Shown: positions 6,569-61,920 of the stretch, in pieces
How positions within the stretch are numbered: the first letter of the stretch is position 1
How the letters are laid out: each line of letters starts with the position of its first letter
NCBI RefSeq assembly: GCF_003918875.1
Contig: NW_025765003.1
Coordinates: forward strand, 868,001 to 932,000
Direction of reading: 5' to 3'
Source: Haliotis rubra
Lineage: Eukaryota
Length of the DNA: 64,000 bases
Position numbers and translations under genes: made by a program
The notes under the pieces: generated by a model
Told to the model about the DNA's origin: nothing
The model's database searches: none
The model's input: only the letters and a program-made list of their open reading frames with translations

Positions 6569-6954
6569 GGGGCAGTGTGGTAGCCTAGTGGTTAAAGCGT
6601 TCGCTCGTCGCGCCGAAGACCTGGGTTCGATTCCCCACATGGGTACAATGTGTGAAGCCCATTTCTGGTGTCCCCCGCCATTGCTAAAAGCGGCGTAAAA
6701 CTAAAAAACTTACTCACTCACTCCTAAGTGGAGGGGCGGTGGGGTAGCCTAGTGGTTAAAGCGTTAGCTCGTCACACCGCCATATAGCTGCATTATTGCT
6801 GAGTGCGGCGTAAAACTAAAGAAAACTCGCTCGTCACGCCAAAGACCCGGGTTCGATTCCCCTCATGGGTAAAATGTATGAAGCGCATTTTTGGTGACTC
6901 CGCCGTGATATTGCAGGGATATTGCTAAAAGCAGCGTAAAACTAAACTCACTCA
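6569..6954 (+). mobile_element. Tandem pair of SINE-A (6569-6723, 6733-6954); the second carries a SINE-B tail fragment
   Basis: Two A/B-box heads and two (actc)n tails. ccgccatatagctgcattattgctgagtgcggcg is inserted at ~6777-6820. Flanking near-repeat tcttc[t/c]tcagta. Confidence 0.9.
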
Positions 6955-6969
6955 TTCTTTCTTCCTCAG

Positions 6970-7437: not shown

Positions 7438-8125
7438 TTGTTTGTTGTTTAACGCCGCACTCAGCAATATTCCAGCTATATGGCGGCAGTCTGTAAGTAA
7501 TAGAGTCTGGACCAGACAATCCAGTGATCAACAGCATGAGCATCGATCTACGCAGTTAGGATACGATGACGTCAGCCAAGTCACCGAGCCTGACCACCTG
7601 ATCGCCTCTTATAGTCTGTTTGTTGTGAAAACGTACCGATGACTTTCCCTTTAAACTAATATGTAAATCCAATAAAGTGAAATTAAGATTGCGATTCCTC
7701 CTGATTTTACCTTGCCAAATGAACATTTAAATCTCAGAATTATATTCAACTTAGGATAAAAGTTGTTTAACAAACGATCATAGATTCAAACCACTATTAC
7801 TGGTTTGTATTTCAAGGGGGTAAGCGCAGTAGTTGTAACAGTGAAACAAATGCACGTGCGGTACGTGATGAGCGTTAACTTTGACCAACCCTACTTGTTC
7901 TCGGTGTTTCATTTAAGGTGCACACACCCTTGTAATACAAACCAATAATAGATTTAAATGTTCAATTGGCAAGGTAAAATTATGAGGATTCGAAATCTTA
8001 ATTGCACTTTATTCGATTTACGTTTTTGTTTAAAGTGAAATTCATCGGTACGTTTTCACAGCAAACAGACTATAGGACAAGCATGGGTTGCTGAAGACCA
8101 ATTCTAACCTGGATCTTCACGGGTC
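7438..8125 (-). mobile_element. SINE-B (aaac-type tail) interrupted by a MITE
   Basis: Reverse complement of the SINE-B consensus, split at cgcctctTA|..|TAggacaagcatggg. Confidence 0.9.
7612..8072. mobile_element. Foldback MITE with ~125-bp TIRs and TA target duplication
   Basis: tagtctgtttgttgtgaaaacgtaccgatg...catttaaatct versus agatttaaatg...catcggtacgttttcacagcaaacagacta. A second, inner inverted repeat lies at ~7795-7828 and ~7919-7950. TA on both sides. Confidence 0.92.
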
Positions 8126-8519: not shown

Positions 8520-8762
8520 GACCCGTGAAGATCCGGGTTAGAATTGAACTTCAGGAACCCATGCTTGTCGTAAGAGACGACTAACGGGATCGGGTGGTCA
8601 GGCTCGCTGACTTGGTCGACACATGCCATCGTATCCTAACTGCGGAGATCGAAGCTCATGCTGTTGACCACTGGATTGTCTGGTCCAGACTCGATTATTT
8701 ACAGATCGCCGCCATATAGCTGGAATATTGCTGAGTGCGGCGTAAAACTAATCTCACTCACT
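8520..8762 (+). mobile_element. SINE-B, full length
   Basis: Colinear with the other copies from head to (actc)n tail. Confidence 0.92.
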
Positions 8763-9594: not shown

Positions 9595-9951
9595 ACCTGT
9601 GAAGATCCGGGTGACAATTGGTCTTCAGGAACCCATGCTTGTCGTAAATGACGACTAACAGGAACGGGTGGTCACTCTCGCTGAGTGAGTGAGTGAGTTT
9701 AGTTTTACGCCACACTCAGCAATATTCCAGCTATATGGCGGCGGTCTGTAAATAATCGAGTCTGGACCAGACAATCCAGTGATCAACCACTCTCGCTGAC
9801 GTGGTTGAGACAATCCATCGTATCCCAATTTCGTAGATCGATGCCCATGCTGTTGATCACTGGATTGTCTGGTCTCGATTCGATTATTTACAGACCGCCG
9901 CCATATAGCTGGAATATTGGTGAGTGCGGCGTAAAACTAAATTCACTCACT
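9595..9951 (+). mobile_element. SINE-B containing a nested antisense 5'-truncated SINE-B (9685-9787)
   Basis: Inner TSD cactctcgctga at 9673-9684 and 9788-9799. Outer TSD tcatctttt(t)ctata. Confidence 0.92.
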
Positions 9952-11231
9952 CATCTTTTCTATATCGACATACAATCAAGATGCAGGTGTATGTTTCAGT
10001 CAATGTATGTTCATCATTTTCGCCATACAGCTGTCGGTAACAATGTGGCCAAAATATTAATAGTAATATGAATCATCTTGCCACTACCTCATCGAGATAG
10101 CATGGGTAAATATGTTATGAACACCACGTGTAAGCTTCTATAATTACATTTATGAGGGAAATGACCCCGGGATTATATTGCAACGACAAACACACCACCT
10201 ACTGTGCTACGCCACCGCGACTTAACACTTTTCTTGTCATGTCAACAAGATAGTTAAGAACACGTGTGTGTTTTTCCGGCGAGCACGTTCACGAACATCC
10301 TGTTTTAGGGTCAGATATAAGACATACAAGTCACTTCTATACCTCCTCTTACATATCTCGTGAATCCCATTGGCTGCCCTTTATGTGATCCCAAATCCCC
10401 ACATAGGGTCACGCGATCCCTTGGCCTGTATAGGCTAGGCAAACAATAAGCGACAATCTCACAGCCATGTCAAAAAGATGATTCACAAACCCAATATTTG
10501 CAAAAATTTTGATACGCTTTTGTTGACGGTATCCGACGGATTTTTTCATTTTTCTAAATTTACGCATCATATTTCGAGTAAACAACTTGCGCCCCGATGT
10601 GCAAGCTCCGTATAACTTATAAAGAGAATACAGCTCGGAGTTGCGAGAAACCACACGTTTTGTCAGCTCATTGAATTCCAACCCGACTTAGCGGGGGACA
10701 TCGAAAACTCCTCCACAGGCTGTTGCGTTGAGGGCACTCTCAACACCTGTGTCTCACAAAAACTGCTAAATACTTATTGTGAGATGGAAATTACGATTGG
10801 TATTGAGAAAAGACTATGTTATTTGAGAATAATGTGATTTTGCACGATACTGGACAAAAAATAACCTTTTGCCTAAACTCATTACGTTTTTCGTTAGGTT
10901 CACCTGCTTCGAAAACCATGTAATCTATAATATACATCCAGATGTTGAAAAAAGTGACGTTTTCGATGTTTGCTGTTATTGTGACGAAACGCATGCACCC
11001 TGGTGTACTTTTTATTATGAGGTTATACATCATAGGGAGAAATAGACCCGCGGTAACACACATGCTCGAAGAACAGTGTCGGTATCACAGAAAGTTCCCT
11101 TACATGTAGCTGATAAGCCTTACTTCACCGTATATTGCACTTTTGAAAGTTATTGAAAATAAAAGTTTGAAACCTCTGTCCTAGTAATGACGTGAGGTCA
11201 GTTTAACCAGCGAGACATCCCTCACATACCA

Positions 11232-14271: not shown

Positions 14272-14770
14272 CTTGCATTCAACTAGCTTAAGATCCTCCT
14301 ATGAACGTGGAAATTTATTCAGATTTAGTATTGTACATATTTACATAGAGGGTATGGGTGTCTCAACATTAAACTGAGTTGATATTAACATGAAATACAG
14401 CGACATACAAACACACCTTATGACGAGGATGTTCAGGTGCGCCGTGGGCTGGTCTGTTAACTTACCGTATACACACATATATATACAGACAGACAAACGG
14501 ACAGACATACAGACATACAAACACACCTTATGACGAGGATGTTCAGGTGCGCGGTGGGCTGGTTTGTTAACTTACCGTATACACAGATATATACAGACAG
14601 ACAGACAAACAGACACTCACTCCTCACTTACCTATCTACCTACCTGCAAACCTACCCTCCTTCCTTTGTACATGGGGCGGTGGGGTAGCCTAGTGGTTAA
14701 AGTTCGCTCGTCACACCGAAGGCCCGGGTTCGATTCCCCACATGGGTACAATGTGTGAAGCCCATTTCTG
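14272..14770 (+). repeat. Left arm of an inverted duplication (partner 28452-28813)
   Basis: cttgcattcaactagcttaagatcctcc...cagcgacatacaaacac plus the SINE-A head is the reverse complement of 28452-28813. It contains an extra 110-bp tandem duplication at 14411 and 14521. Confidence 0.9.
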
Positions 14771-14837
14771 GTGTTCCCCGCCGTGATATTGCTGGGGTAT
14801 TGCTAAAATCGGCGTAAAACCAAACTCACTCAGTCAG
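14674..14837 (+). mobile_element. SINE-A, full length
   Basis: 12-bp TSD tcctttgtacat at 14662-14673 and 14838-14849. Confidence 0.93.
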
Positions 14838-14873
14838 TCCTTTGTACATAGATGGGTAGGTGGGTTAATAGGT

Positions 14874-36654: not shown

Positions 36655-38161
36655 AAGAAGTGGCTGAAAAGTTTTGAGCCTAATTACTAAAGCGGCATAT
36701 TAATCGTTAACATTTGTAATGTTAAGAGTATGTTTCATGCTTTTTGGCCAAATACACAACCTTGCAGCTTATTTCTACTGGATTAAGGGACGTGGTATTC
36801 TGTGGTGATGGACAAATTGTCCTTCGTCTCTAATTAATGGGCTAACTTCACCAGTATGCCATGCTGACATTGCGTCTACTTTAGGGGATCTTACCCCTTT
36901 TTTGCCACTGTTGACTTGGGGAGAGGAATACAAGAGGTCAAAATGAGCCTGGAAGATGAACACCTCCATCTGTTTGTTTATTTGTTTATTAACGCCGCAC
37001 TCAGCAATATTCCAGCTACATGGCAGCGGTCTGTAAATAATCAAGTCTGGACCAGACAAGTCAGTGATTAACAGCATGAGCATCGATCTACGCAATTAGG
37101 ATACGATGATGTATCAACCATGTCAGCGAGCTTGACCACCCGATCCCGTTAGTCGTCTATTACGACAAGCGTGTTGCTGAAGACCAATTCTAACCAGGAT
37201 CTTCACGTGTATCCAGCTCGGGACGAAAACTAAGATTGTTAAGGTACATAACAAGAGACGCATGTGAGTCTCATTAACAGCCCCAAATGGCGTCCCTACT
37301 CCGATAACTTCGACCCAAAACGCAACTCTTAATCCCACCAACTGGCCCCACAAGCATCCAGAATCGCTTCTACCCCAAACGCAGCCCCTACTCCTCTTAC
37401 AAGCATGGGTTCCTGAAGACCAATTCTAACCCGGATCTTCGTCTGCCACCAAGGAATATGTTGATAAAATACATGATATGATTATGGACGGTCGACGTTC
37501 ACAACATTGCCCATGCAGTAGGAGTCCCTCAGGACAAACCTGAGAACATTCTAAGGAATGAACTGGGCATTGCAAAATTTCAGCGCCCTGGGCTCCAAAT
37601 CTTCTGACCCCTAATCAGAAAGACATTTTTTGTCGTTTTAAAGCAACCCCAGCTGATTTCATTGAGCAACTTGAATCCTTGAACGAGTCTGGGGTTCACC
37701 ATTGGCAGCCAGCCTAAACAACAATCAAAGCAGTTGAAACATCTAACATCTCCTCCTCTGAGATCTGTTCCATGAGATGGTGATATTCACGGATCCCTGG
37801 GTTTCCAAAGGAATTCTACTTGTGGACTATCCACGAAAGGTCAGATAATCAATGGCCAATATTATGATTATCTGCACGGGCAACTGATCGGGAATATCGA
37901 GTTTATACCTCGTGGGACACTCTTGGTGGGTGTTTTGCTCCACTAGGACAAGGAACCTGTCCACAAGTCTGTGGTCACCATGGCTACAGTGTATGTTCGT
38001 GGCTTTGAGTTCATTGAACACTGTCCGCATTCACCAGATTTGCCATTATCAGATTTAAACCATTTCCCAAAACTTACAAATGATGATGACGTCATTTCAG
38101 CCCTGGAGGGCAATGCAACATCGTTGACAGGTGTGAACCACATGGGTACGTTGAAAAGTAA
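36655..38161 (+). pseudogene. Decayed mariner-type transposon, interrupted at 36971-37441
   Basis: TIR-like gtggctgaaaagttttgagcct. Frameshifted motifs in order: GLT..HADIASTLGD, SLEDE, SAPWAPNLLT (WVPRLL-like), NESGVHH..KQQSKQ, GILLVDY, HCPHSPDLPLSD (HPPYSPDLAPSD-like), GYVEK*. Confidence 0.85.
36971..37441 (-). mobile_element. Composite insert: SINE-B head fragment (37394-37441) + ~190-bp captured flank + SINE-B (36971-37210)
   Basis: The flank is the reverse complement of 34000-34160 (tcttgttatgtaccttaacaatctta). Confidence 0.82.
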
Positions 38162-44789: not shown

Positions 44790-45123
44790 TCAGAACATAA
44801 TGATTACAGACACTTTCGGACGCTTTATAAAGAACTTTTATCAAAGAGTTAAATGCCCTCATCTGAAACTGACCTTATGTAACTCAACATTTTACAAAAA
44901 ATGTCTTGCAGAACTGTTGACAGCATATTGACGTAAAACTGGTCAAACAAGATGCTATTTTCATTGAAACAATAACGTTAAAAGCAAATAGATCACTCTG
45001 AAGAAACTGCACTGGCTGGGTGGGTTAGATCACTGACTTTCTGTGCTGAGACAGTAGGTTCGAATCCCAGATGAGACTCAACCTGACAAAATACTAGAAC
45101 CTGTACTTTACTGAGAAAGTGTA

Positions 45124-45274
45124 GTGAGTGAGTTTTGTTTTACGCCGCTTTTAGCAATATTCCAGCAATATCACGGCGGGGGACACCAGAAATGGGCTTC
45201 ACACAATGTACCCATGTGGGGAATCGAACCCGGCCTTCGGCGAACGCTTTAACCATTATGCTACCCCACCGCCC
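45124..45274 (-). mobile_element. SINE-A inserted into an older tRNA-like element (B-box ggttcgaatccc at ~45057)
   Basis: 13-bp TSD ctgagaaagtgta at 45111-45123 and 45275-45287. Confidence 0.92.
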
Positions 45275-47027
45275 CTGAGAAAGTGTAATCCCAAAATATA
45301 ACATATGTTACATCTGACCACTTTCTAAATGGCATTGTTTAATCATAGATCACTCCATAGATTCTTAAATCGAGATACTGTTGAAAGGCTGGCAAATATG
45401 TTTGTAAGAATTGTCTTCCGGTGTTCGTGGTCAAGGGGAAATAACTCTTGTTTTCGGTAATTAGTAACATGTCTATGAACATTTTAAGAGTCAAAATTAT
45501 GAAATAATTCAAAATCGGGACACAAGATCTGGATAACACAGCTCACTTAGATTACACGACCAAACATACAATGGTAATTCCCGGCAGCGTGCATTTCAAG
45601 ACTTTATATTTAGAGTGGTGTATAAATCAAGATGTTTCTCCACTTGCTTGTAATCTGACAAATGACAGTGAGTTGAGTGTCATAATAAAAGAAAATAGAC
45701 GTCAGCTAAAACCGCCATCTCGTAAAGTCTCGTAACTCATCGATTATTCTCGTATTAGCGTGTATCTCACCTGCACGTTCAGCGTCTACCGGAATTAAGC
45801 ACGCGCTGCCAGCGTACAGCAGTCCCGTGATTTGAATGAAGAGTAGCGATAATGATATGAAGAATAATAATACTCTGTACCCTTAGCGATGCTGGCAAAC
45901 CTTCCTCCTCATCAAAGCGACATGGCGAAGCTGAAGAGTAGTTATCGTAAATAACGACATGGGTTTGATCAGCCACTACAACACAAATCCATTATGTACA
46001 ATTATTTGATTATTTTCCTGCTCTCTATGCCTCGTCAAATAAACATTCTGCGCTTTTATGAAACTAATAATTTTTCTGTATGAAACCAGTTCACGTTTGT
46101 TCCCAAGACTGTTTGAGTCCGTTGCTAATATACTTCCCTTTGATCTGCACGTGCAGGCCGTGGCTCGTGCAACGACCGGCCCACTGACGCTACGATGCAC
46201 ATACGACATCCTATCCCACAAGCGCCAAGCCTGTTCCACCGGCGGAGATGATATCTTTGATACGACGTCACGTTGACGAGCTTACGGTCAGTAAAACGCA
46301 CTATCTATAGTAACTTTTCATGTTACGATGGGAGAGTTTCCTCAGAGTATATACCGACTGAATATTACGTCTTTTGGTCTATTAAATCGAATCCGCATTC
46401 GGAAATACGCATCGCATCTGGCAATTTATACCATTTCCACCGATACCTCATTAATGGCGTGTTTTACAGTAAAGTTATTTCAACATTTAGCAATTATCCT
46501 GTTGATCATGATGGGCACAATAAATCTCGGTGTATAAAAATAACATTAATCGAAAACATGACGTGTCTAAGGCCCACTGATGGACAGTAATTGTTGGACA
46601 TGGTTTGGACATTTCGATAAAATGTCATTACCAATTAACTGGGATTAGATGAGTTAAATATGTATTGTAATCATTAATAGTGTTTGAGTTTCTACAAACA
46701 TAATGTTCTGCCCATAATGTCGTAAATTCTTCAGAATGAAAAGAGGGCACTTATATGAAATCTGTTAAAAAGCGGAAAGACCAAATTAACACCTTTGGTT
46801 TAAATGCATTATATGCGAAAATAATTCGATATTGTCAGAAATATATGACAGTTTTATTTCTAGCCAGTAGGCATGATAATTCGCATTCCAGATTGGGTTC
46901 TTTCTTATCCACCCGTGGGCCACGTCGACAAGGGAGATAACTCGACCTTTTTGTGATGTCGCTCAGCAACCATGTATCTTCGAGTTTTTCTCCCGAATTG
47001 ATAAGATCTTTTTCTTATACACACGAA

Positions 47028-47760: not shown

Positions 47761-49627
47761 TCTCGCCTGGCTGCATTAGTGTGATTTCTTATTCCAAAAT
47801 GATCAGAATAATCAGAATTTTCATAGCCGAATGTTATTTTGGCCCTCGAAGAAAGACAGACAAATCCCACCAGTGCGCCATAATATACAATTACCAAATG
47901 AAATTCCAGACACCCAGTGCAGCATCTTCAGACTTGGTCGGACATTCAGCGACAACCAACCTCCGTTATGTTCTATTTTGCGATATGATATTACCCTGTC
48001 AACTGCTAATAGATGCCGTCGAACGTCTGTCGATCATACCCCAGACGGTTGCTCGTGTTAAACGTGTCTAATGAGGGATTGAAGAATCCTAGAAAAACAG
48101 AAGGAAGTGATCCATAACCCTATGTTATTGGGGGCAGAATACCAGGTCATTTCTGCGCCAGATACAAACAGGTCTGACATGCCTTGGACATAACACGGAA
48201 ATCATTTCAATACGTCCGCCAAGAAAATTGACGCTCCGATTATACTCTGTATGTGAAGACCAAAACCCAATATCCTGAGTATGATAAATTGCTGTATAAT
48301 AACCAGTTTAAATAATGTCAAATATGGAAATAACCGATCGGGATAATCTCCAAGATTGCCCCCAAACAGTATCAGTCCATTATACCCCATCAGGCGATTT
48401 CCTTTCGTGTTTATGCTCTATGATCAAAATTCACTTAGTTCCAAAGATCAATTTCATGTAGCTATCAGATAATAGACGGGTTATTAACATGGCAGATTCA
48501 AATCAACACAATCAGTCATTACACTTTGTATGTCGATTTCATGGATGAACAATGTCGGCCTTTATCGTTTATTCTTCATTTATGTATTCTGTAATAAGCC
48601 AGGGTAAGCGACGCGCTTGATGGATGTTAAAGGATTATTACTGGTGAGATTTTGAAAGCGGGATCATCGAAAACTAGGACCAGGCTTTTTCCACTCATTT
48701 TGTAGCCGGATTCGGCTCATATGAGGCAATTTAACGTAGTTTTAGAAATTTCATTTTCTACTTTATGATTGTCCGTGTCGTGTATTTTGTCCTTTGATGT
48801 TTGAGCTATAAATTATCTGAAGGTTGCGGTTTATGACTAGAGAAAACAAGCACACAAGGCAACGCAGCCGGGGGATATTTTCTCTTGTTTATGAAAAAGC
48901 CACATATTGTTGACTTAAACTTTATTTAGATTGTCGTATTCTCTGTTTCGCTTGGCGTCTGTCATGGCATCTCCATAACGGTCATTGATACGTCACTTTA
49001 AAGGAACATTTTGCGTCGGGTTAAAAACCCGTCACCAATAGCAAAACAAATGTAGCCATTTTGGAAATTAGAGAGGGGACCAAAGGGAATGATGGTATGT
49101 TTTTCTCTCGCCCAAAATGATAGATTGTCATATGAGATATCGGGCTGTAATAGATTGAGTGGCCGTTATGGCTTTCAATACAAACTCTCGTCACTGAATT
49201 CCCAATGATTCAACCTGATGAATTTATCTGAGTCAATAGCAATGACCCTGTTGGCGAATAAGCTGCTTTGGGCGCGGTTGTAATACCTCATCAGAAAGAG
49301 TGAATTAAAAAATAGAAACGAGAAATACCACCAACAAAGGATTCTGAATACCCTCCAGCTCCTCTACGACGTCAATATCAGGTCAGCTTCAACATTGTTA
49401 GTGAGAGTGTGGTTTGATGGCAATATTACAGCAATGTCAAGACGAGGGATATCAGGAACTGGCTCCATACGTGAAGGCAGCGGGAAGGGACGTGTTCGTT
49501 GACAAGCAGGTCATGCAATGTAACCACGCGATAATTAGGCTGCTACGACCAGTATTAGAGATACTTGGGTCTTTTCTTACACATGGTCAGTCATGATTTT
49601 TATACTTGCCATCACTTCACAGATAAT

Positions 49628-49874
49628 ATCCGTGAAGGTCCGGGTTAGAATATTGGCCTTCAGTAACCCATGGTTGTCTTAAGAGGCGACTAACGGGTTC
49701 GGGTGGTCAGGCTCGCTGACTGGGTTGACACATGTCATCGGTTCCCAATTGCGCAGATCGATGCTCATGCTGTTGATCACTGGACTGTCTGGTCCAGACT
49801 CGATTATTCACAGACCGCCGCTATGTAGCTGGAATATTGCTGAGTGCGGCGTAAAACTAAACTCACTCACTCAC
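49628..49874 (+). mobile_element. SINE-B, full length, with a compensatory change in the head stem
   Basis: TSD tcacttcacagata. Head stem gaaggtc/ggccttc. Confidence 0.93.
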
Positions 49875-49936
49875 TCACTTCACAGATATGGAATGTAATA
49901 ATGGAGTGTTCTATCGGAGGACGAGTTAAAAAATAT

Positions 49937-51535: not shown

Positions 51536-54500
51536 GCTTGCAACCCTGTAGGGATTCATGGACAAAGAGGGCCAGCAGTAGCCTCTGCTTGTCTCTCAGT
51601 GGGCGTCGGGGACAGAAAAGGCCCACAGTATCCTACATGTGTCTCCCAGTAGGGGTCGGGGACAGAAAAGGCCCACAGTATCCTATATTTGTCTCTCAGT
51701 GGGGTCGGGGAGAGAAAAGGTCAACAGTATCCGATGTTTGTCTTTCAGTGGGGTCGGGAACAGAAAAGGTCCACAGTATCCTATATTTGTCTCTCAGTGG
51801 GGGTCGGGGACAGAAAAGGTCCACAGTATCCTATATTTGTCTCCCAGTGGGGGTCGGGGACAGAAAAGGTCCACAGTATCCTATGTTTGTCTCTCAGTGG
51901 GGTCGGGGACAGAAAAGGTCCACAGTATCCTGTGTTTGTTTCTCAGTGGGGGTCGGGGACAGAAAAGGTCCACAGTATCCTCGGTTTCTCTCTCAGTGGG
52001 GTCGGGGACAGAAAAGGTCCACAGTATCCTATGTTTGTCTCTCAGTGGGGTCGGGGACAGAAAAGGTCCACAGTATCCTGTGTTTGTTTCTCAGTGGGGG
52101 TCGGGGACAGAAAAGGTCCACAGTATCCTCGGTTTCTCTCTCAGTGGGGATCGGGGACAGAAAAGGTCCACAGTCCTCAGTGGGGATCGGGGACAGAAAA
52201 GGTCCACAGTATCCTATGTAGGTCTCTCAGTGGGGGTCGGGGACAGAAAAGGTCCACAGTATCCTATGCTTGTCTCTCAGTGGAGGTTGGGGACAGAAAA
52301 GGTCCACAGTATCCTATGTTTGTCTCTCAGTGGGGGTCGGGGACAGAAAAGGTCCACAGTATCCTATGTTTGTCTCTCAGTGGAGGTCGGGGACAGAAAA
52401 GGTCCACAGTATCCTATGCTTGTCTCTCAGTGGGGGTCGGGGACAGAAACAGTCCACAGTATCCTATGTTTGTCTCTCGGTGGAGGTCGGGGAGAGAAAT
52501 GGTCCACAGTATCCCATGTTTGTCTCTCGGTTGGGGGCGGGGACAGAAATGGTCCACAGTATCCTATGTTGTCTCTCAGTGGAGGTCGGGGACAGAAAAG
52601 GTCCACAGTATCCTATGTTTGTCTCTCAGTGGGGTCGGGGACAGAAAAGGTCAACAGTATCCTGTGTTTGATTCTCAGTGGGGTCGGGGAGAGAAAAGGT
52701 CAACAGTATCCTATGTTTGTCTCTCAGTGGGGTCGGGGACAGAAAAGGCCCACAGTATCCTATATTTGTCTCTCAGTGGGGTCGGGGACAGAAAAGGTCC
52801 ACAGTATCCTATGTTTGTCTCTCAGTGGGGTCGGGGACAGAAAAGGTCCACAGTATCCTATGTTTGTCTCTCAGTGGGGTCGGGGACAGAAAAGGTCCAC
52901 AGTATCCTGTGTTTGTTTCTCAGTGGGGGTCGGGGAGGGAACGAAAACGTCCACAGTATCCTCGGTTTGTCTCTCAGTGGGGTCGGGGACAGAAAAGGTC
53001 CACAGTATCCTATGTTTGTCTCTCAGTGGGGTCGGGGACAGAAAAGGTCCACAGTATCCTCGGTTTCTCTCTCTCAGTGGGGATCGGGGACAGAAAAGGT
53101 CCACAGTCCTCAGTGGGGATCGGGGACAGAAAAGGTCCACAGTATCCTATGCTTGTCTCTCTCAGTGGAGGTTGGGGACAGAAAAGGTCCACAGTATCCT
53201 ATGTTTGTCTCCCAGTGGGGATCGGGGACAGAAACAGTCCACAGTATCCGATGTTTGTCTCTCAGTATGGGTCAGGGACTGAAAACGTCCACAGTATCCC
53301 ATGTTTGTCTCTCCAGTGGGGGTCGGGGACAGAAACAGTCCACAGTATCCGATGTTTGTCTCTCAGTGGGGGTCGGGGACAGAAAAGGTCCACAGTATCC
53401 TATGTTTGTCTCTCAGTGGGGGTCGGGGACAGAAATGGTCCACAGTATCCTATGCTTGTCTCCCAGTGGGGGTCGGGGACAGAAAAGGTCCACAGTATCC
53501 TATGTTGTCTCTCAGTGGGGGTCGGGGACAGAAAAGGTCCACAGTATCCTATGTTTGTCTCTCAGTGGGGTCGGGGACAGAAAAGGTCCACAGTATCCTA
53601 TGTTTGTCTCTCAGTGGGGGTCGGGGACAGAAAAGGTCCACAGTATCCTATGTTTGTCTCTCTCAGTGGGGTCGGGGACAGAAACAGTCCACAGTATCCT
53701 ATGTATGTTTGTCTCTCAGTGGGGTCGGGGACAGAAAAGGCCCACAGTATCCTATATTTGTCTCTCAGTGGGGTCGGGGAGAGAAAAGGTCAACAGTATC
53801 CTATGTTTGTCTCTCAGTGGGGTCGGGGACAGAAAAGGCCCACAGTATCCTATATTTGTCTCTCAGTGGGGTCGGGGACAGAAAAGGTCAACAGTATCCT
53901 ATGTTTGTCTCTCAGTGGGGTCGGGGACAGAAAAGGCCCACAGTATCCTATATTTGTCTCTCAGTGGGGTCGGGGAGAGAAAAGGTCAACAGTATCCGAT
54001 GTTTGTCTTTCAGTGGGGTCGGGAACAGAAAAGGTCCACAGTATCCTATATTTGTCTCTCAGTGGGGGTCGGGGACAGAAAAGGTCCACAGTATCCTATA
54101 TTTGTCTCCCAGTGGGGTCGGGGACAGAAAAGGTCCACAGTATCCTATGTTTGTCTCTCAGTGGGGTCGGGGACAGAAAAGGTCCACAGTATCCTGTGTT
54201 TGTTTCTCAGTGGGGGTCGGGGACAGAAAAGGTCCACAGTATCCTCGGTTTCTCTCTCAGTGGGGTCGGGGACAGAAAAGGTCCACAGTATCCTATGTTT
54301 GTCTCTCAGTGGGGTCGGGGACAGAAAAGGTCCACAGTATCCTGTGTTTGTTTCTCAGTGGGGGTCGGGGACAGAAAAGGTCCACAGTATCCTCGGTTTC
54401 TCTCTCAGTGGGGATCGGGGACAGAAAAGGTCCACAGTCCTCAGTGGGGATCGGGGACAGAAAAGGTCCACAGTATCCTATGCTTGTCTCTCAGTGGAGG

Positions 54501-55510
54501 TTGGGGACAGAAAAGGTCCACAGTATCCTATGTTTGTCTCCCAGTGGGGATCGGGGACAGAAACAGTCCACAGTATCCGATGTTTGTCTCTCAGTATGGG
54601 TCGGGGACTGAAAACGTCCACAGTATCCCATGTTTGTCTCTCAGTGGAGGTCGGGGACAGAAACAGTCCACAGTATCCGATGTTTGTCTCTCAGTGGGGG
54701 TCGGGGACAGAAAAGGTCCACAGTATCCTATGTTTGTCTCTCAGTGGGGGTCGGGGACAGAAATGGTCCACAGTATCCTATGCTTGTCTCCCAGTGGGGG
54801 TCGGGGACAGAAAAGGTCCACAGTATCCTATGTTGTCTCTCGGTGGAGGTCGGGGAGAGAAAAGGTCCACAGTATCCAATGTTTGTCTCTCAGTGGGGGT
54901 CGGGGACAGAAAAGGTCCACAGTATCCCATGTTTGTCTCTCAGTGGGGGTCGGGGACAGAAAAGGTCCACAGTATCCCATGTTTGTCTCTGCAGTGGGGG
55001 TCGGGGACAGAAACAGTCCACAGTATCCGATGTTTGTCTCTCAGTATGGGTCGGGGACTGAAAACGTCCACAGTATCCCATGTTTGTCTCTCAGTGGAGG
55101 TCGGGGACAGAAACAGTCCACAGTATCCGATGTTTGTCTCTCAGTGGGGGTCGGGGACAGAAAAGGTCCACAGTATCCCATGTTTGTCTCTCAGTGGGGG
55201 TCGGGGACAGAAAAGGTCCACAGTATCCTATGTTTGTCTCTCAGTGGGGGTCGGGGACAGAAAAGGTCCACAGTATCCTATGTTTGTCTCTCAGTATGGG
55301 TCGGGGACAGAACACGTCCACAGTATCCCATGTTTTGATTCTCAGTGGGGGTCGGGGACAGAGAAGGTCCACAGTATCCGATGTTTGTCTCTCAGTATGG
55401 GTCGGGGACAGAAAAGGTCCACACTATCCTATGCTTGCAACCCTGTTGGGATTCAGGGACGAAAAGGGCCAATAGTAGCCCCTGCTTGTCTCCCAGTGGG
55501 GATTCGGGCA
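51536..55510. repeat. 49/50-bp satellite (cagtgggg(g)tcggggacagaaaaggtccacagtatcctatgtttgtctct)
   Basis: About 80 monomers, bracketed by the same diverged unit gcttgcaaccctgt.gggattca (51536, 55433). Internal higher-order duplication at ~51660 and ~53925. Confidence 0.97.
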
Positions 55511-56702
55511 CATCAGAGAACCCCAGTACATGTATTGTGCGTGCGTGCGTGCGTGTGTGTGCCTACGTACGTGTGCGTGCGTTACTGTTCTTTAAATGAA
55601 TGGACCTTTCTCAGCGTTCAATATGTTTATTACAATTATAACACCGTCAGATAGAAAGCATCCGGTCCCGTTCTGCCCTATAACTATCTTTTATAATTGA
55701 AACAACAATGTGTGATCGTCCTTGACCTATTCCTGAATCTCTTAGAAAAGGAAATGTTGGTTAGAAGTTAGACATGAGCTGCAATGTTCTCCCAACATCA
55801 AATAATATCCATCTGAGAGTAGAACTTATTACCTCTTTCAAACAGTAAATTATGTCGAACGTATTTCAGCTTTTAGCAGCATCAAAGCAACCGGGCATTG
55901 TAGCATCACCACGCGTAGAACGTACACACCACTCCCTGAACCCGCTAACCATTCACTACAGCTTGTCGCTGCTCGAGCAGAAACACACTGGGTCCACTGA
56001 TCGATCGTTCACAAATGGACTTTCAATGTTGACAGCGATTTTATGAGAGCTTCACTGCTTTCATGCACCAATTTGATTGCTTGTCAATCTGTTTCAGAAA
56101 ATAATCATGCGATTAATTTCCATAACAACAAAGGCAAAATATTTTCAGATTACAGTTGTTGCTTTTTTTTGGTCATCCTTAAAGAATGTTTAAAAAACAG
56201 GCACCCAACAGTACCTCAGACGCGCGACTGAAAGAGGTACGGTCAAAGGGAAGTAACTCTATATCACCACCGCCGCTTCTATTTGTTGAACGAGCTCGTC
56301 ACGCAAACACAAACAAACGAAGAGTTTCGTTACAGCAGCAGGCCTTTCCACAACTGATATCGATATTTTGTAAGTAGGGGCATCCTTTTGAACAGTAAAA
56401 TGTCCCGAAACTGTTCAAATGTCCGGTGACCGCTTTTGTTTGTTTGTAAGCGTGTCAGAACGTGGTGGTTTAAATGTTTTAAATGTCCAATTTGTCATTC
56501 AGTTCACGACCTGAGGTGAACTTTTGACCAGATGCACAGTTGATACTGAGTCGGACCGGATGATCAGAATGACAGACAAACACCAACTGACTCACAATGC
56601 CACACTAGAGACACTCTATAAAACGGTCACCTTGATAATGAGGACCACCATATCTGTTAACGTGAGAGAAGTGTGACTGAATAATTCTCAGCTTGAATTT
56701 GA

Positions 56703-56899
56703 TTTGTTTGTTTCTTTAACGCCCGACCCTGCAATATTCCCGCTATATGACGGCGGTCTGTTAATACTCGAGTCTGGACCAGACAATCCAGTGATAGGCA
56801 TCATGGGCATCGATCTAAGCAATTGGGATACGATGACGTGTCGACCAATTCAGCGAGTCTGTCCACCCGATCCCGTTAGTCGCCTCTTACGATAAGCAT
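56703..56899 (-). mobile_element. SINE-B lacking the pseudoknot part of the head
   Basis: Reverse-complement match from the aaac tail to atgcttatcgtaagaggcgactaacggg. Confidence 0.85.
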
Positions 56900-57829
56900 T
56901 AGTGGTGGTCCGATTAATTGAAATAATCGAAGATTGGTCGCAGTGACTTAACGACCAAGCAATCGATCATGTTTTCTCATAATCGAACGCAAACAATTCT
57001 GGAACACTTGTTTGCATTAACAATATTTTTCATAAGGTTGGTTTTGTCTGTTACATTTCATGAGTGCTACAAGCTCGTTCCAAGTCATGGTTGAATTTAT
57101 CTTCAAGACTCCAAGAAATTAGTGTTCCTAACCTACTAGTCATCCTATAAAGATGTGAAATTTGCCAATGCCTTTTGTGCAATTTGCAAAAACACCAAAG
57201 AACTACAGGGTTTTTTCTTTATTTTTTTTGTCCATTAACAAAAATAATCAGGAAAATTTAATAAATGACGCTAACCAATTATTTTCGATGATTGATCAGT
57301 TGTAATGAACCAATCATCAATTATGAGATTTTGACCAAATCCAATCCGATTTTGTATATTATTCTTGTTTCTGAGTTCATATGTAATCGACCAAGTTGTA
57401 TGTCAAATATATTTGTTTTCAACAACAGAAGATGTTCATCCTCTACTGAACATACAAATCAACAGATACAAAATTCACACGTACGACTCATTGTTGTTTT
57501 ACGCCGCAGTCAGCAATAGACGTCGAGTCGTAACATCTCCTGGCTCTCAGTTAAGATTCACAAAAACAGAAAACTGTTGCCAAGCTCCGTTCTGTTCCGG
57601 TATTCTCCAGAGTATCATGTCTTCAGTGAAATTTTATTTTTATAAAAACATTCATCTTGGACCAGTCCGCCACATTAGTTTCTTTTCAGCGTTATGCCAT
57701 CACCTTTAGCACAATACATTGACAGACATTCTCTCTCATCCATCGGCATAATTTCATGAATTGGTTATACTAAGCGTACTGTCTTTGGAATCCTGCTCAA
57801 AACGAACACATCCGGGGTACTTATCAGGG

Positions 57830-58005: not shown

Positions 58006-58196
58006 CGTAACCTATGCATGGGAGGAACCCTTATTACTCAGGTTTCCATTATTCAATATGTGTGCCATAAGTACCGGTCAGTCACAATTGTGGTCTAATT
58101 GTGTATCTCAACGATGGAGGAAATAACTGCTGGGCTCGTCATATTATGAAACTTTTATGATATCATGATGTTTACAGAGTTCATTTTCTTGTTGTA

Positions 58197-58442
58197 ACCC
58201 GTGAAGATCCGGGTTAGAATTGATCTTCAGTAATCAATGATTGTCGTAAGAGGTGACTAACGGGATCGGGTGGTCAGGCTCGCTGACTTGGTTGACACAT
58301 GTCATCGTATCCCAACTGCGTAGATCGATGCTCTTGCTGTTGATCACTGTATTGTCTGGTCCACACTCTATTATTTACAGACTGTCCCCATATAGCTGGA
58401 TTATTGCTGAGTTCGGCGTAAAACTAAACTCACTCACTCACT
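58197..58442 (+). mobile_element. SINE-B, full length
   Basis: Head stem gaagatc/gatcttc, (actc)n tail, short TSD ttgtaa. Confidence 0.92.
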
Positions 58443-59873: not shown

Positions 59874-60582
59874 TTGCTCCAATTAAAGTTTCATCATCAT
59901 ACAATTACCTTGGTATGCTATTTACTAGTAATCTCACTTGGCAGGCATCTATAAACAATCTCACTCTAAAGCTAAGAAGGCTATCATAACTGTTCAGCAT
60001 TGTTTAAGTTTGAAAGTCTCTCATATGAACTATATTATAAAATCTTTGACACTAAAATCCTGCCAGTTGTATTGTATGGTTCTGAGGTATGGGTGAGTGA
60101 GTGAGTGAGTTTAGTTTTACGCCGCACTCAGCAATATTCCAGCTATATGGCGGCGGTCTGTAAATAATCGAGTCTGGACCAGACAATCCAGTGATCAACA
60201 GCATGAGCATCGATCTGCGCAATTGGGAACCGATGACATTTGTCAACCAAGTCAGCGAAACTGACCACCCGATCCCGTTAGTCGCCTCTTACGACAAGAT
60301 AGTCGCCTTGTTATGGCAAGCACATGGGTTGCTGAAGACCTATTCTACCCCGGATCTTCACGGGTCTCTGAGGTATGGGGTATTCAAAGGTTTAAAAGCA
60401 TTTAAAATATACAGTTGCAAGCATGTAAACGTTTTCTGGACATCTGCAGATCAACAGCTAGTGATACTGTATTAGGTGAATGCGGAAGATACCCAATCTA
60501 TATCTTGGCACTGAAACGTTCTGTCTTATATTGGTTAAAAGTCATCTTAATGCGTTCTCACCGCTCTACCTTAAAAGCCTAC
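59874..60582 (+). pseudogene. LINE ORF2 remnant (post-RT region), duplicated at ~60926-61525
   Basis: YNYLGMLF..IFDTKILPVVLYGSEVWG..QACKRFL..VLGECGRYPI..YWLKV..KAY. Confidence 0.85.
60094..60366 (-). mobile_element. SINE-B (duplicated-hairpin subfamily); tail-less duplicate at 61131-61309
   Basis: 13-bp TSD tctgaggtatggg at 60081-60093 and 60367-60379. Confidence 0.94.
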
Positions 60583-61920
60583 TTTAGTATTCAAACACAA
60601 ACAAAGCGATGCGATGCGAAAAATGTATGTGTGTAAATTCACTGAGTATTCTCTATGCATCTCGTCATAAATATCGCACCACCCACTTTTTTCACAGAGT
60701 AAAACTGGATCTATAACCTCATAAAATGGTGCTTAGAAAGCACATTAAACTGTTTAGATGGCCTCATGTGAGCGTTCAAGTCAGAAAATTGACAACACAA
60801 GACCGAATTTAAGCACTAATTGAAGGTTTAATTGTAGCAAACTAAAGTTCACTTAAATCACAGTAAAATAAGGTGAAATAAGTATGGCTGCCGGGGTCGT
60901 TACAACAGACACACAACACAATTCATTTATAAACTTGCTCCAATTAAAGTTTCATCATCATACAATTACCTTGGTATGCTATTTACTAGTAATCTCACAT
61001 GGCAGGCATCTATAAACAATCTGACTCTAAAGCTAAGAAGGCTCTCATAACTGTTCAGCATTGTTTAAGTTTGAAAGTCTCTCATATGAACTATATTATA
61101 AAATCTTTGACACTAAAATCCTGCCAGTTGTCAGTGATCAACAGCATGAGCATCGATCTGCGCAATTGGGAACCGATGACATTTGTCAACCAAGTCAGCG
61201 AAACTGACCACCCGATCCCGTTAGTCGCCTCTTACGACAAGATAGTCGCCTTGTTATGGCAAGCACATGGGTTGCTGAAGACCTATTCTACCCCGGATCT
61301 TCACGGGTCTCTGAGGTATGGGGTATTCAAAGGTTTAAAAGCATTTAAAATATACAGTTGCAAGCATGTAAACGTTTTCTGGACATCTGCAGATCAACAG
61401 CTAGTGATACTGTATTAGGTGAATGCGGAAGATACCCAATCTATATCTTGGCACTGAAACGTTCTGTCTTATATTGGTTAAAAGTCATCTTAATGCGTTC
61501 TCACCGCTCTACCTTAAAAGCCTACTTTAGTATTCAAACACAAACAAAGCGATGCGATGCGAAAAATGTATGTGTGTAAATTCACTGAGTATTCTCTATG
61601 CATCTCGTCATAAATATCGCACCACCCACTTTTTTCACAGAGTAAAACTGGATCTATAACCTCATAAAAATGGTGCTTAGAAAAGCACATTAAACTGTTT
61701 AGATGGCCTCATGTGAGCGTTCAAGTCAGAAAATTGACAACACAAGACCGAATTTAAGCACTAATTGAAGGTTTAATTGTAGCAAACTAAAGTTCACTTA
61801 AATCACAGTAAAATAAGGTGAAATAAGTATGGCTGCCGGGGTCGTTACAACAGACACACAACACAATTCACATTTTATTAATGTTGAACACACTAGTAAG
61901 GTCCACAATGACTGGGTAAC

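What the first reader, a model, noticed from the sequence alone, without database searches (positions are those of the whole stretch)
49628..49700. SINE-B starts with a conserved non-tRNA pseudoknot module: candidate novel structured RNA or ribozyme head
Seen: essentially all full-length copies (7438-, 8189+, 8520+, 9595+, 17704-, 34161+, 36971-, 44535+, 49628+, 58197+, 60094-) begin at about (g)acccgtgaag, next to the TSD where one is visible. The first ~75 nt fold as a closing stem cccgt/acggg around an H-type pseudoknot (S1 tgaagatc/ggtcttca, S2 gggt(t)/(a)accc), a linker atgctt, a hairpin gtcgt-aagag-gcgac and an unpaired TAA. Variation often preserves pairing: A-U to G-C in S1 at 49628 (gaaggtc/ggccttc), U-G to U-A in S1 at 58197, U-G to U-A in the hairpin at 8520 and 9595, and cctgt/acagg at 9595 (this one could be CpG decay). 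Established: SINE heads normally derive from tRNA, 7SL or 5S RNA, and several non-LTR retrotransposons use 5' self-cleaving ribozymes. By eye the fold does not fit the HDV, hammerhead, twister or pistol consensus. Inference: an RNA module, possibly taken from a LINE 5' UTR, that defines the 5' end or promotes retroposition. The repeat family may already be catalogued even if the structure is not.
Basis: partly seen in the sequence, partly recalled or inferred. Interest (0 to 1): 0.85.

Follow-up and report, generated by a model that had tools for sequence, protein, structure and literature searches.

The report
Non-tRNA head of abalone SINE
This stretch is the first ~71 bases of a very abundant short jumping element of abalone; it has a real non-tRNA head of a kind described in 2016 as borrowed from long jumping genes, one hairpin has modest support, and the proposed pseudoknot and ribozyme have none.

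Summary
49627-49699 is the 5' head of a ~250-nt, TSD-flanked SINE with a (CTCA)n tail. About 13 copies lie in the window and roughly 2-4 x 10^5 in the 1.38-Gb abalone genome. Full-length copies start at the same base, (G)ACCCGTGAAG. Rfam and ARAGORN find no tRNA, 5S, 7SL or ribozyme.

The family type is already published. Matetovici et al. 2016 (PMC4758252) described "LP-SINEs" in Haliotis and other molluscs, with a ~70-bp head shared with the 5' ends of Nimb and RTE LINEs and proposed as a promoter. I could not compare sequences with theirs.

On the fold, RNAalifold recovers the closing stem, S1 and the 3' hairpin. Only S1 varies among active subfamilies (A-U, G.U, G-C; U.G, U-A), and these are all transitions, so support is modest. 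Two subfamilies break S1. One pseudoknot S2 pair is lost in the most successful subfamily, and the rest of S2 is invariant. Folding z-scores are weak.

No ribozyme class fits, and I found no LINE carrying this head in this genome.

First-stage readers flagged this same family in several other windows of this genome. Verdict: a known kind of element, whose head structure is an untested hypothesis.

The parts
49612..49625 (+). 5' target-site duplication (tcacttcacagata)
   Evidence: Identical 14-mer recurs at 49875-49888 directly after the (CTCA)n tail
49627..49874 (+). Whole SINE copy (~248 nt): head, body, shared tail ...GCGGCGTAAAACTAAA(CTCA)n
   Evidence: BLAST of this copy finds 13 head-bearing relatives in the window. 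No TTTT inside any of 7 full copies
49627..49699 (+). 71-73-nt non-tRNA head module (the finding)
   Evidence: CM R1 score 88 bits. No Rfam or ARAGORN match
49629..49633 (+). Closing stem, 5' strand (tccgt here, cccgt in consensus); pairs with 49693-49697 (acggg)
   Evidence: Predicted by RNAalifold. Invariant among subfamilies, so untested
49634..49640 (+). S1 hairpin, 5' strand (gaaggtc); pairs with 49655-49661 (ggccttc)
   Evidence: Pair 12:29 seen as A-U 42, G.U 15, G-C 10; pair 13:28 as U.G 43, U-A 27 in 75 distinct young copies
49655..49661 (+). S1 hairpin, 3' strand
   Evidence: As above. Subfamilies GAATTTC and GAATGTC break pair 11:30
49642..49646 (+). Proposed S2 5' strand (gggtt) in the S1 loop; proposed partner 49665-49669 (aaccc)
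   Evidence: Pair 19:38 is not kept in the dominant subfamily; GGG/CCC is invariant. RNAalifold instead places CCC in the loop of a 4-bp mini-hairpin
49676..49690 (+). 3' hairpin gtc(g/t)t-aagag-gcgac
   Evidence: Predicted by RNAalifold and invariant among subfamilies. Tandemly duplicated (24 nt) in the dominant subfamily
49706..49720 (+). Further hairpin gtcag-gctcg-ctgac just after the head, in the SINE body
   Evidence: Fold. Loop differs between subfamilies (GCTCG or TTTCG). Deleted in some otherwise intact copies
49875..49888 (+). 3' target-site duplication

Best explanation
The stretch is the 5' head of a highly successful, recently active abalone SINE of the 'LP-SINE' type. This type is a short LINE-dependent retroposon whose first ~71 nt are not a tRNA. 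They form a self-contained module that the literature reports at the 5' termini of unrelated LINEs (Nimb, RTE). The module most likely travels with the RNA because it fixes the element's own first nucleotide, that is, it acts as an internal, downstream-of-+1 promoter or start-site unit (inferred, not shown). Its RNA probably also contains at least one real hairpin, S1. Retroposition uses a LINE enzyme that recognises the ~55-nt tail, which this SINE shares with a tRNA-headed SINE in the same genome. Shown here: family, boundaries, TSDs, abundance, non-tRNA nature, shared tail, subfamily variation. Inferred: promoter function, LINE origin, RNA role.
For: Fixed 5' end next to TSDs. Sharp family boundary in contigs of three organisms. 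About 435,000 rough CM candidates genome-wide and 15 heads in 110 kb of arbitrarily chosen DNA. A 58-mer of the body has 4,280 exact copies, showing recent activity. No tRNA, 5S, 7SL or ribozyme match at E<=10, none at gathering thresholds, and no ARAGORN hit. The published LP-SINE description fits: Haliotis, TSDs, tandem-repeat tail preceded by ACTAAA, ~70-bp LINE-derived head, tail shared with tRNA SINEs. A tRNA-derived SINE with the same tail is present in the window. All active subfamilies keep the head even when they delete or duplicate neighbouring parts.
Against: I could not compare the head with the published LP heads or with Nimb-17_LMi, I-3_DR or RTE-9_CPB, because no sequences are held. 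Membership therefore rests on description only. The paper's wording leaves open whether ACTAAA is the Haliotis or the Ostrea hexamer. No LINE carrying this head was found in this genome. Promoter activity is untested, and no recognisable A/B boxes, Inr or DPE were seen by eye. All runs were contigs, so no transcript 5' ends could be read.
Confidence: 0.6

Rival explanations
1. The head works mainly as a structured RNA. It would be a four-way junction (closing stem, S1, a 4-bp mini-hairpin, the 3' hairpin), perhaps with a GGG/CCC loop contact, needed for RNP formation, stability or template use by the LINE enzyme. This is not exclusive of a promoter role, as with the Pr77 module of trypanosome L1Tc/ingi.
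For: RNAalifold recovers the three nested helices from 12 copies. In S1, pairs 12:29 and 13:28 change among active subfamilies while staying paired, including sense-strand-only G.U states. C29 occurs almost only with G12: 10 G-C against 3 'other' cells at that pair, and A12 with C29 in a single young copy, L083. Cells changed on both sides number 16 against 6.4 +/- 2.2 in shuffles, and the covariation score is 0.105 against at most 0.065 for slid partners. The dominant subfamily inserted a whole extra hairpin at the junction without loss of activity. The module's ends coincide with the closing stem.
Against: All informative changes are transitions, and about 57% of transitions in such a stem keep pairing by chance (my estimate). 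The number of independent events is about three. Subfamilies GAATTTC and GAATGTC break S1 yet left several copies. The closing stem, the 3' hairpin and GGG/CCC never vary, so they are untested. S2 pair 19:38 is lost. The covariation term is only -0.3 kcal/mol and folding z-scores run from -0.4 to -2.6. The shuffle control is known to be exceeded by related sequences that have no structure.
Confidence: 0.25
2. The head is a self-cleaving ribozyme that cuts the SINE RNA out of read-through transcripts at its first nucleotide.
For: The 5' end is exact. LINEs are known to use 5' HDV-like ribozymes, and earlier notes of this scan report one on a Nimb-like LINE of this genome (not verified here). 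A G1.U71 wobble could close the first helix in the G-starting subfamily (read from the sequence).
Against: No ribozyme family scored at E<=10 on a stretch holding both head types. Upstream flanks are unrelated, so only classes that cleave at their own 5' edge are possible. The helix order here (closing stem around S1, CCC strand and hairpin) is not the HDV nested double pseudoknot. The hairpin loop has no C to form P1.1 (read from the sequence). A strict HDV-type descriptor found no solution in four copies, but that descriptor was not validated. The module reported as conserved ends at ~70 nt, so downstream partners cannot be required.
Confidence: 0.04
3. The head is a very degenerate tRNA-derived unit, or another captured ~71-nt small Pol III RNA, carrying an internal Pol III promoter.
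For: Its size (71 nt) and cloverleaf-like four-helix layout resemble a tRNA. GGGTTAGAAT resembles a B box (6 of 9 positions, by eye). No TTTT occurs inside full copies. Capture of small RNAs at LINE 5' ends is documented for U1/U2 (cited in PMC4758252).
Against: ARAGORN finds nothing. Rfam shows no tRNA or any other small-RNA family even at E<=10. The B-box-like motif sits at +16, too close to the start, and lacks the invariant C. No A box is present. No stand-alone gene was identified.
Confidence: 0.07

Closest known systems
LP-SINEs (Lsa_2, Hdi_LP/Hmi_LP, Oco/Oed_LP, Sgl_LP) of Matetovici et al. 2016, Genome Biol Evol 8:253 (PMC4758252)
   Same: Haliotis host. Short TSD-flanked retroposon. 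~70-bp non-tRNA head at the exact 5' end. Tandem-repeat tail preceded by a poly(A)-signal-like hexamer (ACTAAA here). Tail shared with tRNA-derived SINEs.
   Different: Sequence identity with the published consensus could not be checked. This genome shows several head subfamilies, including a 24-nt hairpin duplication, and an abundance and recent activity that are not mentioned in the passages of the paper I read. The paper proposes a promoter and gives no RNA fold.
Pr77 hallmark of trypanosomatid L1Tc/ingi and their non-autonomous partners (cited in PMC4758252)
   Same: A ~70-80-nt module confined to the extreme 5' end, shared by otherwise unrelated LINEs and by short non-autonomous elements. 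It is thought to define the 5' end.
   Different: Pr77 has demonstrated promoter and HDV-like ribozyme activity. Here neither is shown, and the fold is not HDV-like. No sequence comparison was made.
HDV-like ribozymes at LINE 5' ends (R2, RTE, L1Tc)
   Same: They sit at the first nucleotide of a retrotransposon RNA.
   Different: The nested double-pseudoknot topology, P1.1 and Rfam similarity are all absent here.
tRNA-derived SINE heads
   Same: Similar length, four-helix layout, position at the SINE 5' end.
   Different: No A or B boxes, and no tRNA model match.

Membership tests
SINE (LINE-dependent short retroposon) | Short, non-coding, dispersed, flanked by variable TSDs, 3' tail of simple repeats | tested here: met
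   ~250 nt; TSDs of 10-14 nt at six copies; (CTCA)n or (CAAA)n tails; dispersed over hundreds of contigs
LP-SINE (Matetovici 2016) | Head not derived from tRNA, 5S or 7SL | tested here: met
   Rfam gathering search 0 hits; at E<=10 only a spurious snoRNA; ARAGORN 0
LP-SINE (Matetovici 2016) | First ~70 bp homologous to Lsa_2/Hdi_LP heads and to the 5' ends of Nimb-17_LMi, I-3_DR and RTE-9_CPB | not testable with these tools
   No supplement or sequence is held. Collection scans returned only abalone-type copies or chance hits
LP-SINE (Matetovici 2016) | Tail shared with tRNA-derived SINEs of the same or related species | tested here: met
   tRNA-headed SINE copies in the window end in the same ~55-nt tail
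LP-SINE (Matetovici 2016) | A LINE in the same genome carrying the module at its 5' end | tested here: not met
   Negative-selection patterns gave only SINE deletion variants. The abundant RNase H-bearing LINE has no CM hit and no sequence similarity in its 5' region. The search was far from exhaustive, and the paper does not require this feature in every host.
HDV-like self-cleaving ribozyme | Nested double pseudoknot starting at +1 (P1, P2, P3, P1.1), catalytic C in J4/2 | tested here: not met
   Helix order incompatible; no C in the candidate L3 loop; no descriptor solution (descriptor unvalidated); no Rfam hit; drz-agam-2-2 absent from the genome
Hammerhead, twister, pistol, hatchet and other small ribozymes | Match to the family covariance model; for internally cleaving classes, conserved sequence on both sides of the cut | tested here: not met
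   No match at E<=10. Sequence upstream of the first base is unrelated between copies
   S1 is kept through variation at two pairs. S2 pair 19:38 is lost in 37 of 66 scored sequences, and the other S2 pairs are invariant. A 2-nt linker would have to span the 7-8-bp S1 (geometric reasoning)
tRNA-derived SINE head | A and B boxes and a tRNA-model match | tested here: not met
   By eye, the best A-box match is 5 of 9 and the best B-box-like match 6 of 9, at the wrong position

The most novel reading that the evidence does not exclude
The LP head is a genuine, still-undescribed class of structured 5'-terminal retrotransposon RNA. It would be a ~71-nt four-way junction, possibly with a GGG/CCC loop-loop contact. 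It would move between LINE clades and SINEs across animal phyla and act at both the DNA level (start-site definition) and the RNA level, as Pr77 does in trypanosomes.
Probability: 0.2. Interest if true: 0.65.

Novelty: new member of a known kind. Interest (0 to 1): 0.3.

Why it matters
How SINEs that lack a Pol III-type head are transcribed, and why one ~70-nt unit recurs at the 5' tips of unrelated LINEs and SINEs, has been open since 2016. This abalone genome holds an unusually active LP-type family, with hundreds of thousands of copies, thousands of them near-identical, and several live head variants. That makes it a practical system for testing promoter versus RNA-structure roles. As it stands, the finding mainly re-identifies a published element type. 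It removes the pseudoknot and ribozyme claims and leaves one hairpin with modest evolutionary support.

Tried and rejected
1. tRNA, 5S, 7SL or ribozyme origin: Rfam and ARAGORN were negative.

2. HDV-like fold: topology reasoning plus a strict descriptor gave no solution. My attempted positive control on LINE 5' ends was inconclusive, so the descriptor carries little weight.

3. Finding the source or partner LINE:
- Head followed by non-SINE sequence gave only deletion or truncation variants of the SINE.
- Tail preceded by non-SINE sequence gave only truncated SINEs.
- I fetched 30 top reverse-transcriptase loci.
- The 5' regions of seven LINE copies had no CM hit with filters off.
- I traced the 5' boundary of the abundant RNase H-bearing LINE. 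Its alignment score against the head is no better than shuffles.
- Rfam on those 5' regions found nothing, and drz-agam-2-2 has no match genome-wide.

4. A weak CM hit upstream of a tRNA SINE (L034:7002) looked like a compensated S1, but it is unique in the genome, so it is chance.

5. Weak periodic CM hits at 51.5-55.4 kb are an unrelated 50-bp satellite.

6. Cross-taxon homologues:
- Three viral-contig scans found nothing. The first viral pattern used a gap range that misses the commonest spacing.
- One metagenome scan gave only four abalone-type contigs plus chance hits.
- One genome-contig scan gave two chance hits in prokaryotic MAGs.

7. Literature search for motif strings or later work on LP-SINEs found nothing beyond the 2016 paper.

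8. Transcript 5' ends: all available runs are contigs and no run is on record as RNA, so no starts or strands could be read.

Full report
**What is there.** Window 49627-49874 (+) is one copy of a ~250-nt retroposon. It is flanked by a 14-nt target-site duplication (49612-49625 and 49875-49888) and ends in ...GCGGCGTAAAACTAAA(CTCA)n. The finding (49628-49700) is its first ~71-73 nt.

Two head motifs recur far above chance:
- The 3' hairpin motif has 12 matches against 0.03 expected.
- The 5' motif has 11 matches against 0 expected.

BLAST and a covariance model built from seven window copies (R1) find 13 head-bearing copies in the window.

**The 5' end.** All full-length copies start at (N)ACCCGTGAAG. 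Where TSDs can be read (six copies), 0-4 extra bases separate the TSD from that start. In 100 further young copies, the duplication subfamily starts with G in 28 of 30, while the non-duplicated subfamily has no preferred preceding base, four of each. So the G is templated in one subfamily and is not a general cap-derived addition. Contigs from runs of three organisms, laid on copy 58196, rise about 100-fold in depth exactly at 58195-58199. Their loose ends before 58196/58197 have no consensus. The fixed 5' end is therefore real.

**Abundance and activity.** The window's genome is 1.38 Gb in 2,855 contigs. Earlier notes of this scan call it an abalone.
- R1 gives about 435,000 rough candidates.
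- Eleven arbitrarily chosen 10-kb pieces hold 15 heads, which implies roughly 2 x 10^5 copies.
- A 58-mer of the body has 4,280 exact copies, so the family was active very recently.
- None of seven full copies contains TTTT.

**What it is not.** Rfam at gathering thresholds finds nothing in the window. At E<=10, on a 651-nt stretch holding both head types, the only hit is a spurious snoRNA. ARAGORN finds no tRNA. The head is therefore not detectably tRNA, 5S, 7SL, snRNA or any catalogued ribozyme.

**What is already known.** Matetovici et al. 2016 (PMC4758252) described "LP-SINEs" with these features:
- They are TSD-flanked short retroposons in Littorina, Haliotis diversicolor and H. midae, Ostrea and Saccostrea, with the same unit added in scallop SINEs and one family in medfly.
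- The first ~70 bp are homologous to the extreme 5' ends of two Nimb-clade LINEs (locust, zebrafish) and one RTE LINE (turtle), and the homology is confined to that unit.
- They end in tandem repeats preceded by hexamers such as ACTAAA.
- They share tails with tRNA-derived SINEs.

The authors propose a LINE promoter and mention the Pr77 module of L1Tc/ingi as a parallel. They give no RNA structure for the head.

Everything I can check fits this description. The host is an abalone, the head is non-tRNA and ~71 nt, ACTAAA sits before the repeats, and a tRNA-headed SINE in the window carries the same ~55-nt tail. I could not check sequence homology, because figures and supplements are not held and no paper in the library contains these motifs. 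The wording also leaves open whether ACTAAA is the Haliotis or the Ostrea hexamer. I put the assignment to the LP type at about 0.7-0.75. No later paper on LP-SINEs is in the library.

**The fold.** It also returns a 4-bp mini-hairpin (34-37 with 43-46) that places CCC in a loop, giving a four-way junction. The covariation term is only -0.3 kcal/mol. Single-sequence folds differ from copy to copy, and z-scores run from -0.4 to -2.6.

**Subfamily variation.** Copies decay neutrally after insertion, so only differences between active subfamilies are informative. I sampled 100 young copies anchored on the body, not the head, aligned 79 of them and counted pairs.
- Pair 12:29 occurs as A-U (42), G.U (15) and G-C (10), with 3 unpaired.
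- Pair 13:28 occurs as U.G (43) and U-A (27), with none unpaired.
- C29 occurs almost only together with G12, in several loop contexts.
- Cells changed on both sides number 16 against 6.4 +/- 2.2 in shuffles. The covariation score (0.105) exceeds all slid controls, which reach at most 0.065.

This looks like compensatory evolution through a wobble intermediate, on the sense strand. The caveats are serious. Every step is a transition, and about 57% of transitions in such a stem preserve pairing by chance (my estimate). There are only about three independent events. The shuffle control is known to be exceeded by related sequences that have no structure. Two subfamilies (GAATTTC and GAATGTC) break pair 11:30 yet left several copies.

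The closing stem, the 3' hairpin and the GGG/CCC partners do not vary among subfamilies, so they are neither supported nor refuted. The mini-hairpin shows U.G in subfamily II and C-G in subfamily I, and it tolerates a 2-nt loop insertion, again through a transition.

**The pseudoknot.** Pair 19:38 is U-A in 29 sequences and unpaired in 37. The whole dominant subfamily has G there and some copies have C, without any change at position 38. A 2-nt linker would also have to span S1. At most, a GGG/CCC loop-loop contact remains possible.

**The duplication.** The dominant subfamily carries a 24-nt tandem duplication of the 3' hairpin, which has since diverged. The head therefore tolerates an extra hairpin at the junction. 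Another set of copies has lost the hairpin that follows the head. The head itself is always kept.

**Ribozyme idea.** Flanks upstream of base 1 are unrelated, so only classes that cut at their own 5' edge are possible. The helix order here is not the HDV-type nested double pseudoknot, and the candidate L3 loop has no C for P1.1. A strict descriptor found no solution in four copies, but I could not validate that descriptor. Rfam is negative. I rate the ribozyme idea at about 0.04.

**LINE origin.** I could not find a LINE with this head in this genome.
- Patterns selecting heads followed by non-SINE sequence, or tails preceded by non-SINE sequence, returned only deleted or truncated SINE copies.
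- The most abundant intact LINE among the top reverse-transcriptase hits carries an RNase H domain.
- I traced its ORF1 and 5' boundary in four copies.
- R1 with filters off finds nothing there, and local alignment with the head scores no better than shuffles.

Earlier notes of this scan report a minimal HDV-like ribozyme on a Nimb-like LINE of this genome and a motif after it that resembles a SINE head. I did not reproduce either on the copies I reached.

**Other collections.** Three viral scans, one metagenome scan and one prokaryote-genome scan gave only abalone-type copies or chance hits. No cross-phylum covariation test was therefore possible.

**Cross-species hints.** In a run of a second organism, the commonest differences from the laid copy lie in the hairpin loop and in linkers, not in stems. 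This fits either a promoter or a structure.

**Verdict.** The element type and its LINE-derived head were published in 2016, and first-stage readers flagged the same family in several other windows of this genome.
- Internal start-site or promoter module that is carried in the RNA: most likely, but inferred.
- RNA role for S1 and the junction: plausible, about 0.25, and not exclusive of the promoter role.
- Pseudoknot: not supported.
- Ribozyme: unlikely.

Noticed in passing
window 51560-55437: A 50-bp satellite of about 78 copies. It creates a spurious 1,321-aa ORF (51689-55654) with meaningless Pfam hits, and gives periodic weak hits to the head CM.
   Followed up: yes
window ~14674-14845 (+), ~45118-45276 (-), 6640-6957 (+): Copies of a ~150-nt tRNA-derived SINE (starting GGGGCGGTGGGGTAGCC) that end in the same ~55-nt tail and (CTCA)n as the LP-type SINE. 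This implies a shared LINE partner and module exchange.
   Followed up: partly
window 9682-9953: Two partial SINE copies joined tail-to-tail in inverted orientation, a foldback that looks like twin priming. Similar 'opposite strands' joints appear in laid contigs.
   Followed up: no
window 60251-60366 and 61218-61306 (-): Two heads with identical 25-nt upstream flanks about 940 bp apart, a local segmental duplication rather than two insertions.
   Followed up: no
window 7447-7601, 36984-37211, 56715-56940 (-): An older subfamily whose tail is GGCGTTAAA(CAAA)n instead of GGCGTAAAACTAAA(CTCA)n. Copy 56940 has its first ~45 nt replaced by unrelated sequence.
   Followed up: no
L001, L003, L018 (RT/RNase H); L164:2311-3942 (ORF1): An abundant LINE with an RNase H domain, CCHC knuckles in ORF1 and a strikingly A/C-rich coding strand. 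Its 5' boundary lies near L164:2011-2036.
   Followed up: partly
G000:C2098:771719-772294; G000:C2198:199445-208972: A tandem array with 54-nt spacing built from the 3' half of the head. Separately, three heads 3-6 kb apart are each followed by T-rich sequence instead of the SINE body. I could not fetch them, and a stand-alone gene was not excluded.
   Followed up: no
L156, L158, L161, L162 (PEAW01... contigs): Contigs filed in the metagenome collection carry abalone-type copies of this SINE, so they are probably host DNA.
   Followed up: partly
L142, L143, L149 and similar: SINE copies lacking the GGTCAG...CTGAC hairpin that follows the head (ACGGGATCCCTGA...). That hairpin therefore appears to be dispensable.
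   Followed up: partly
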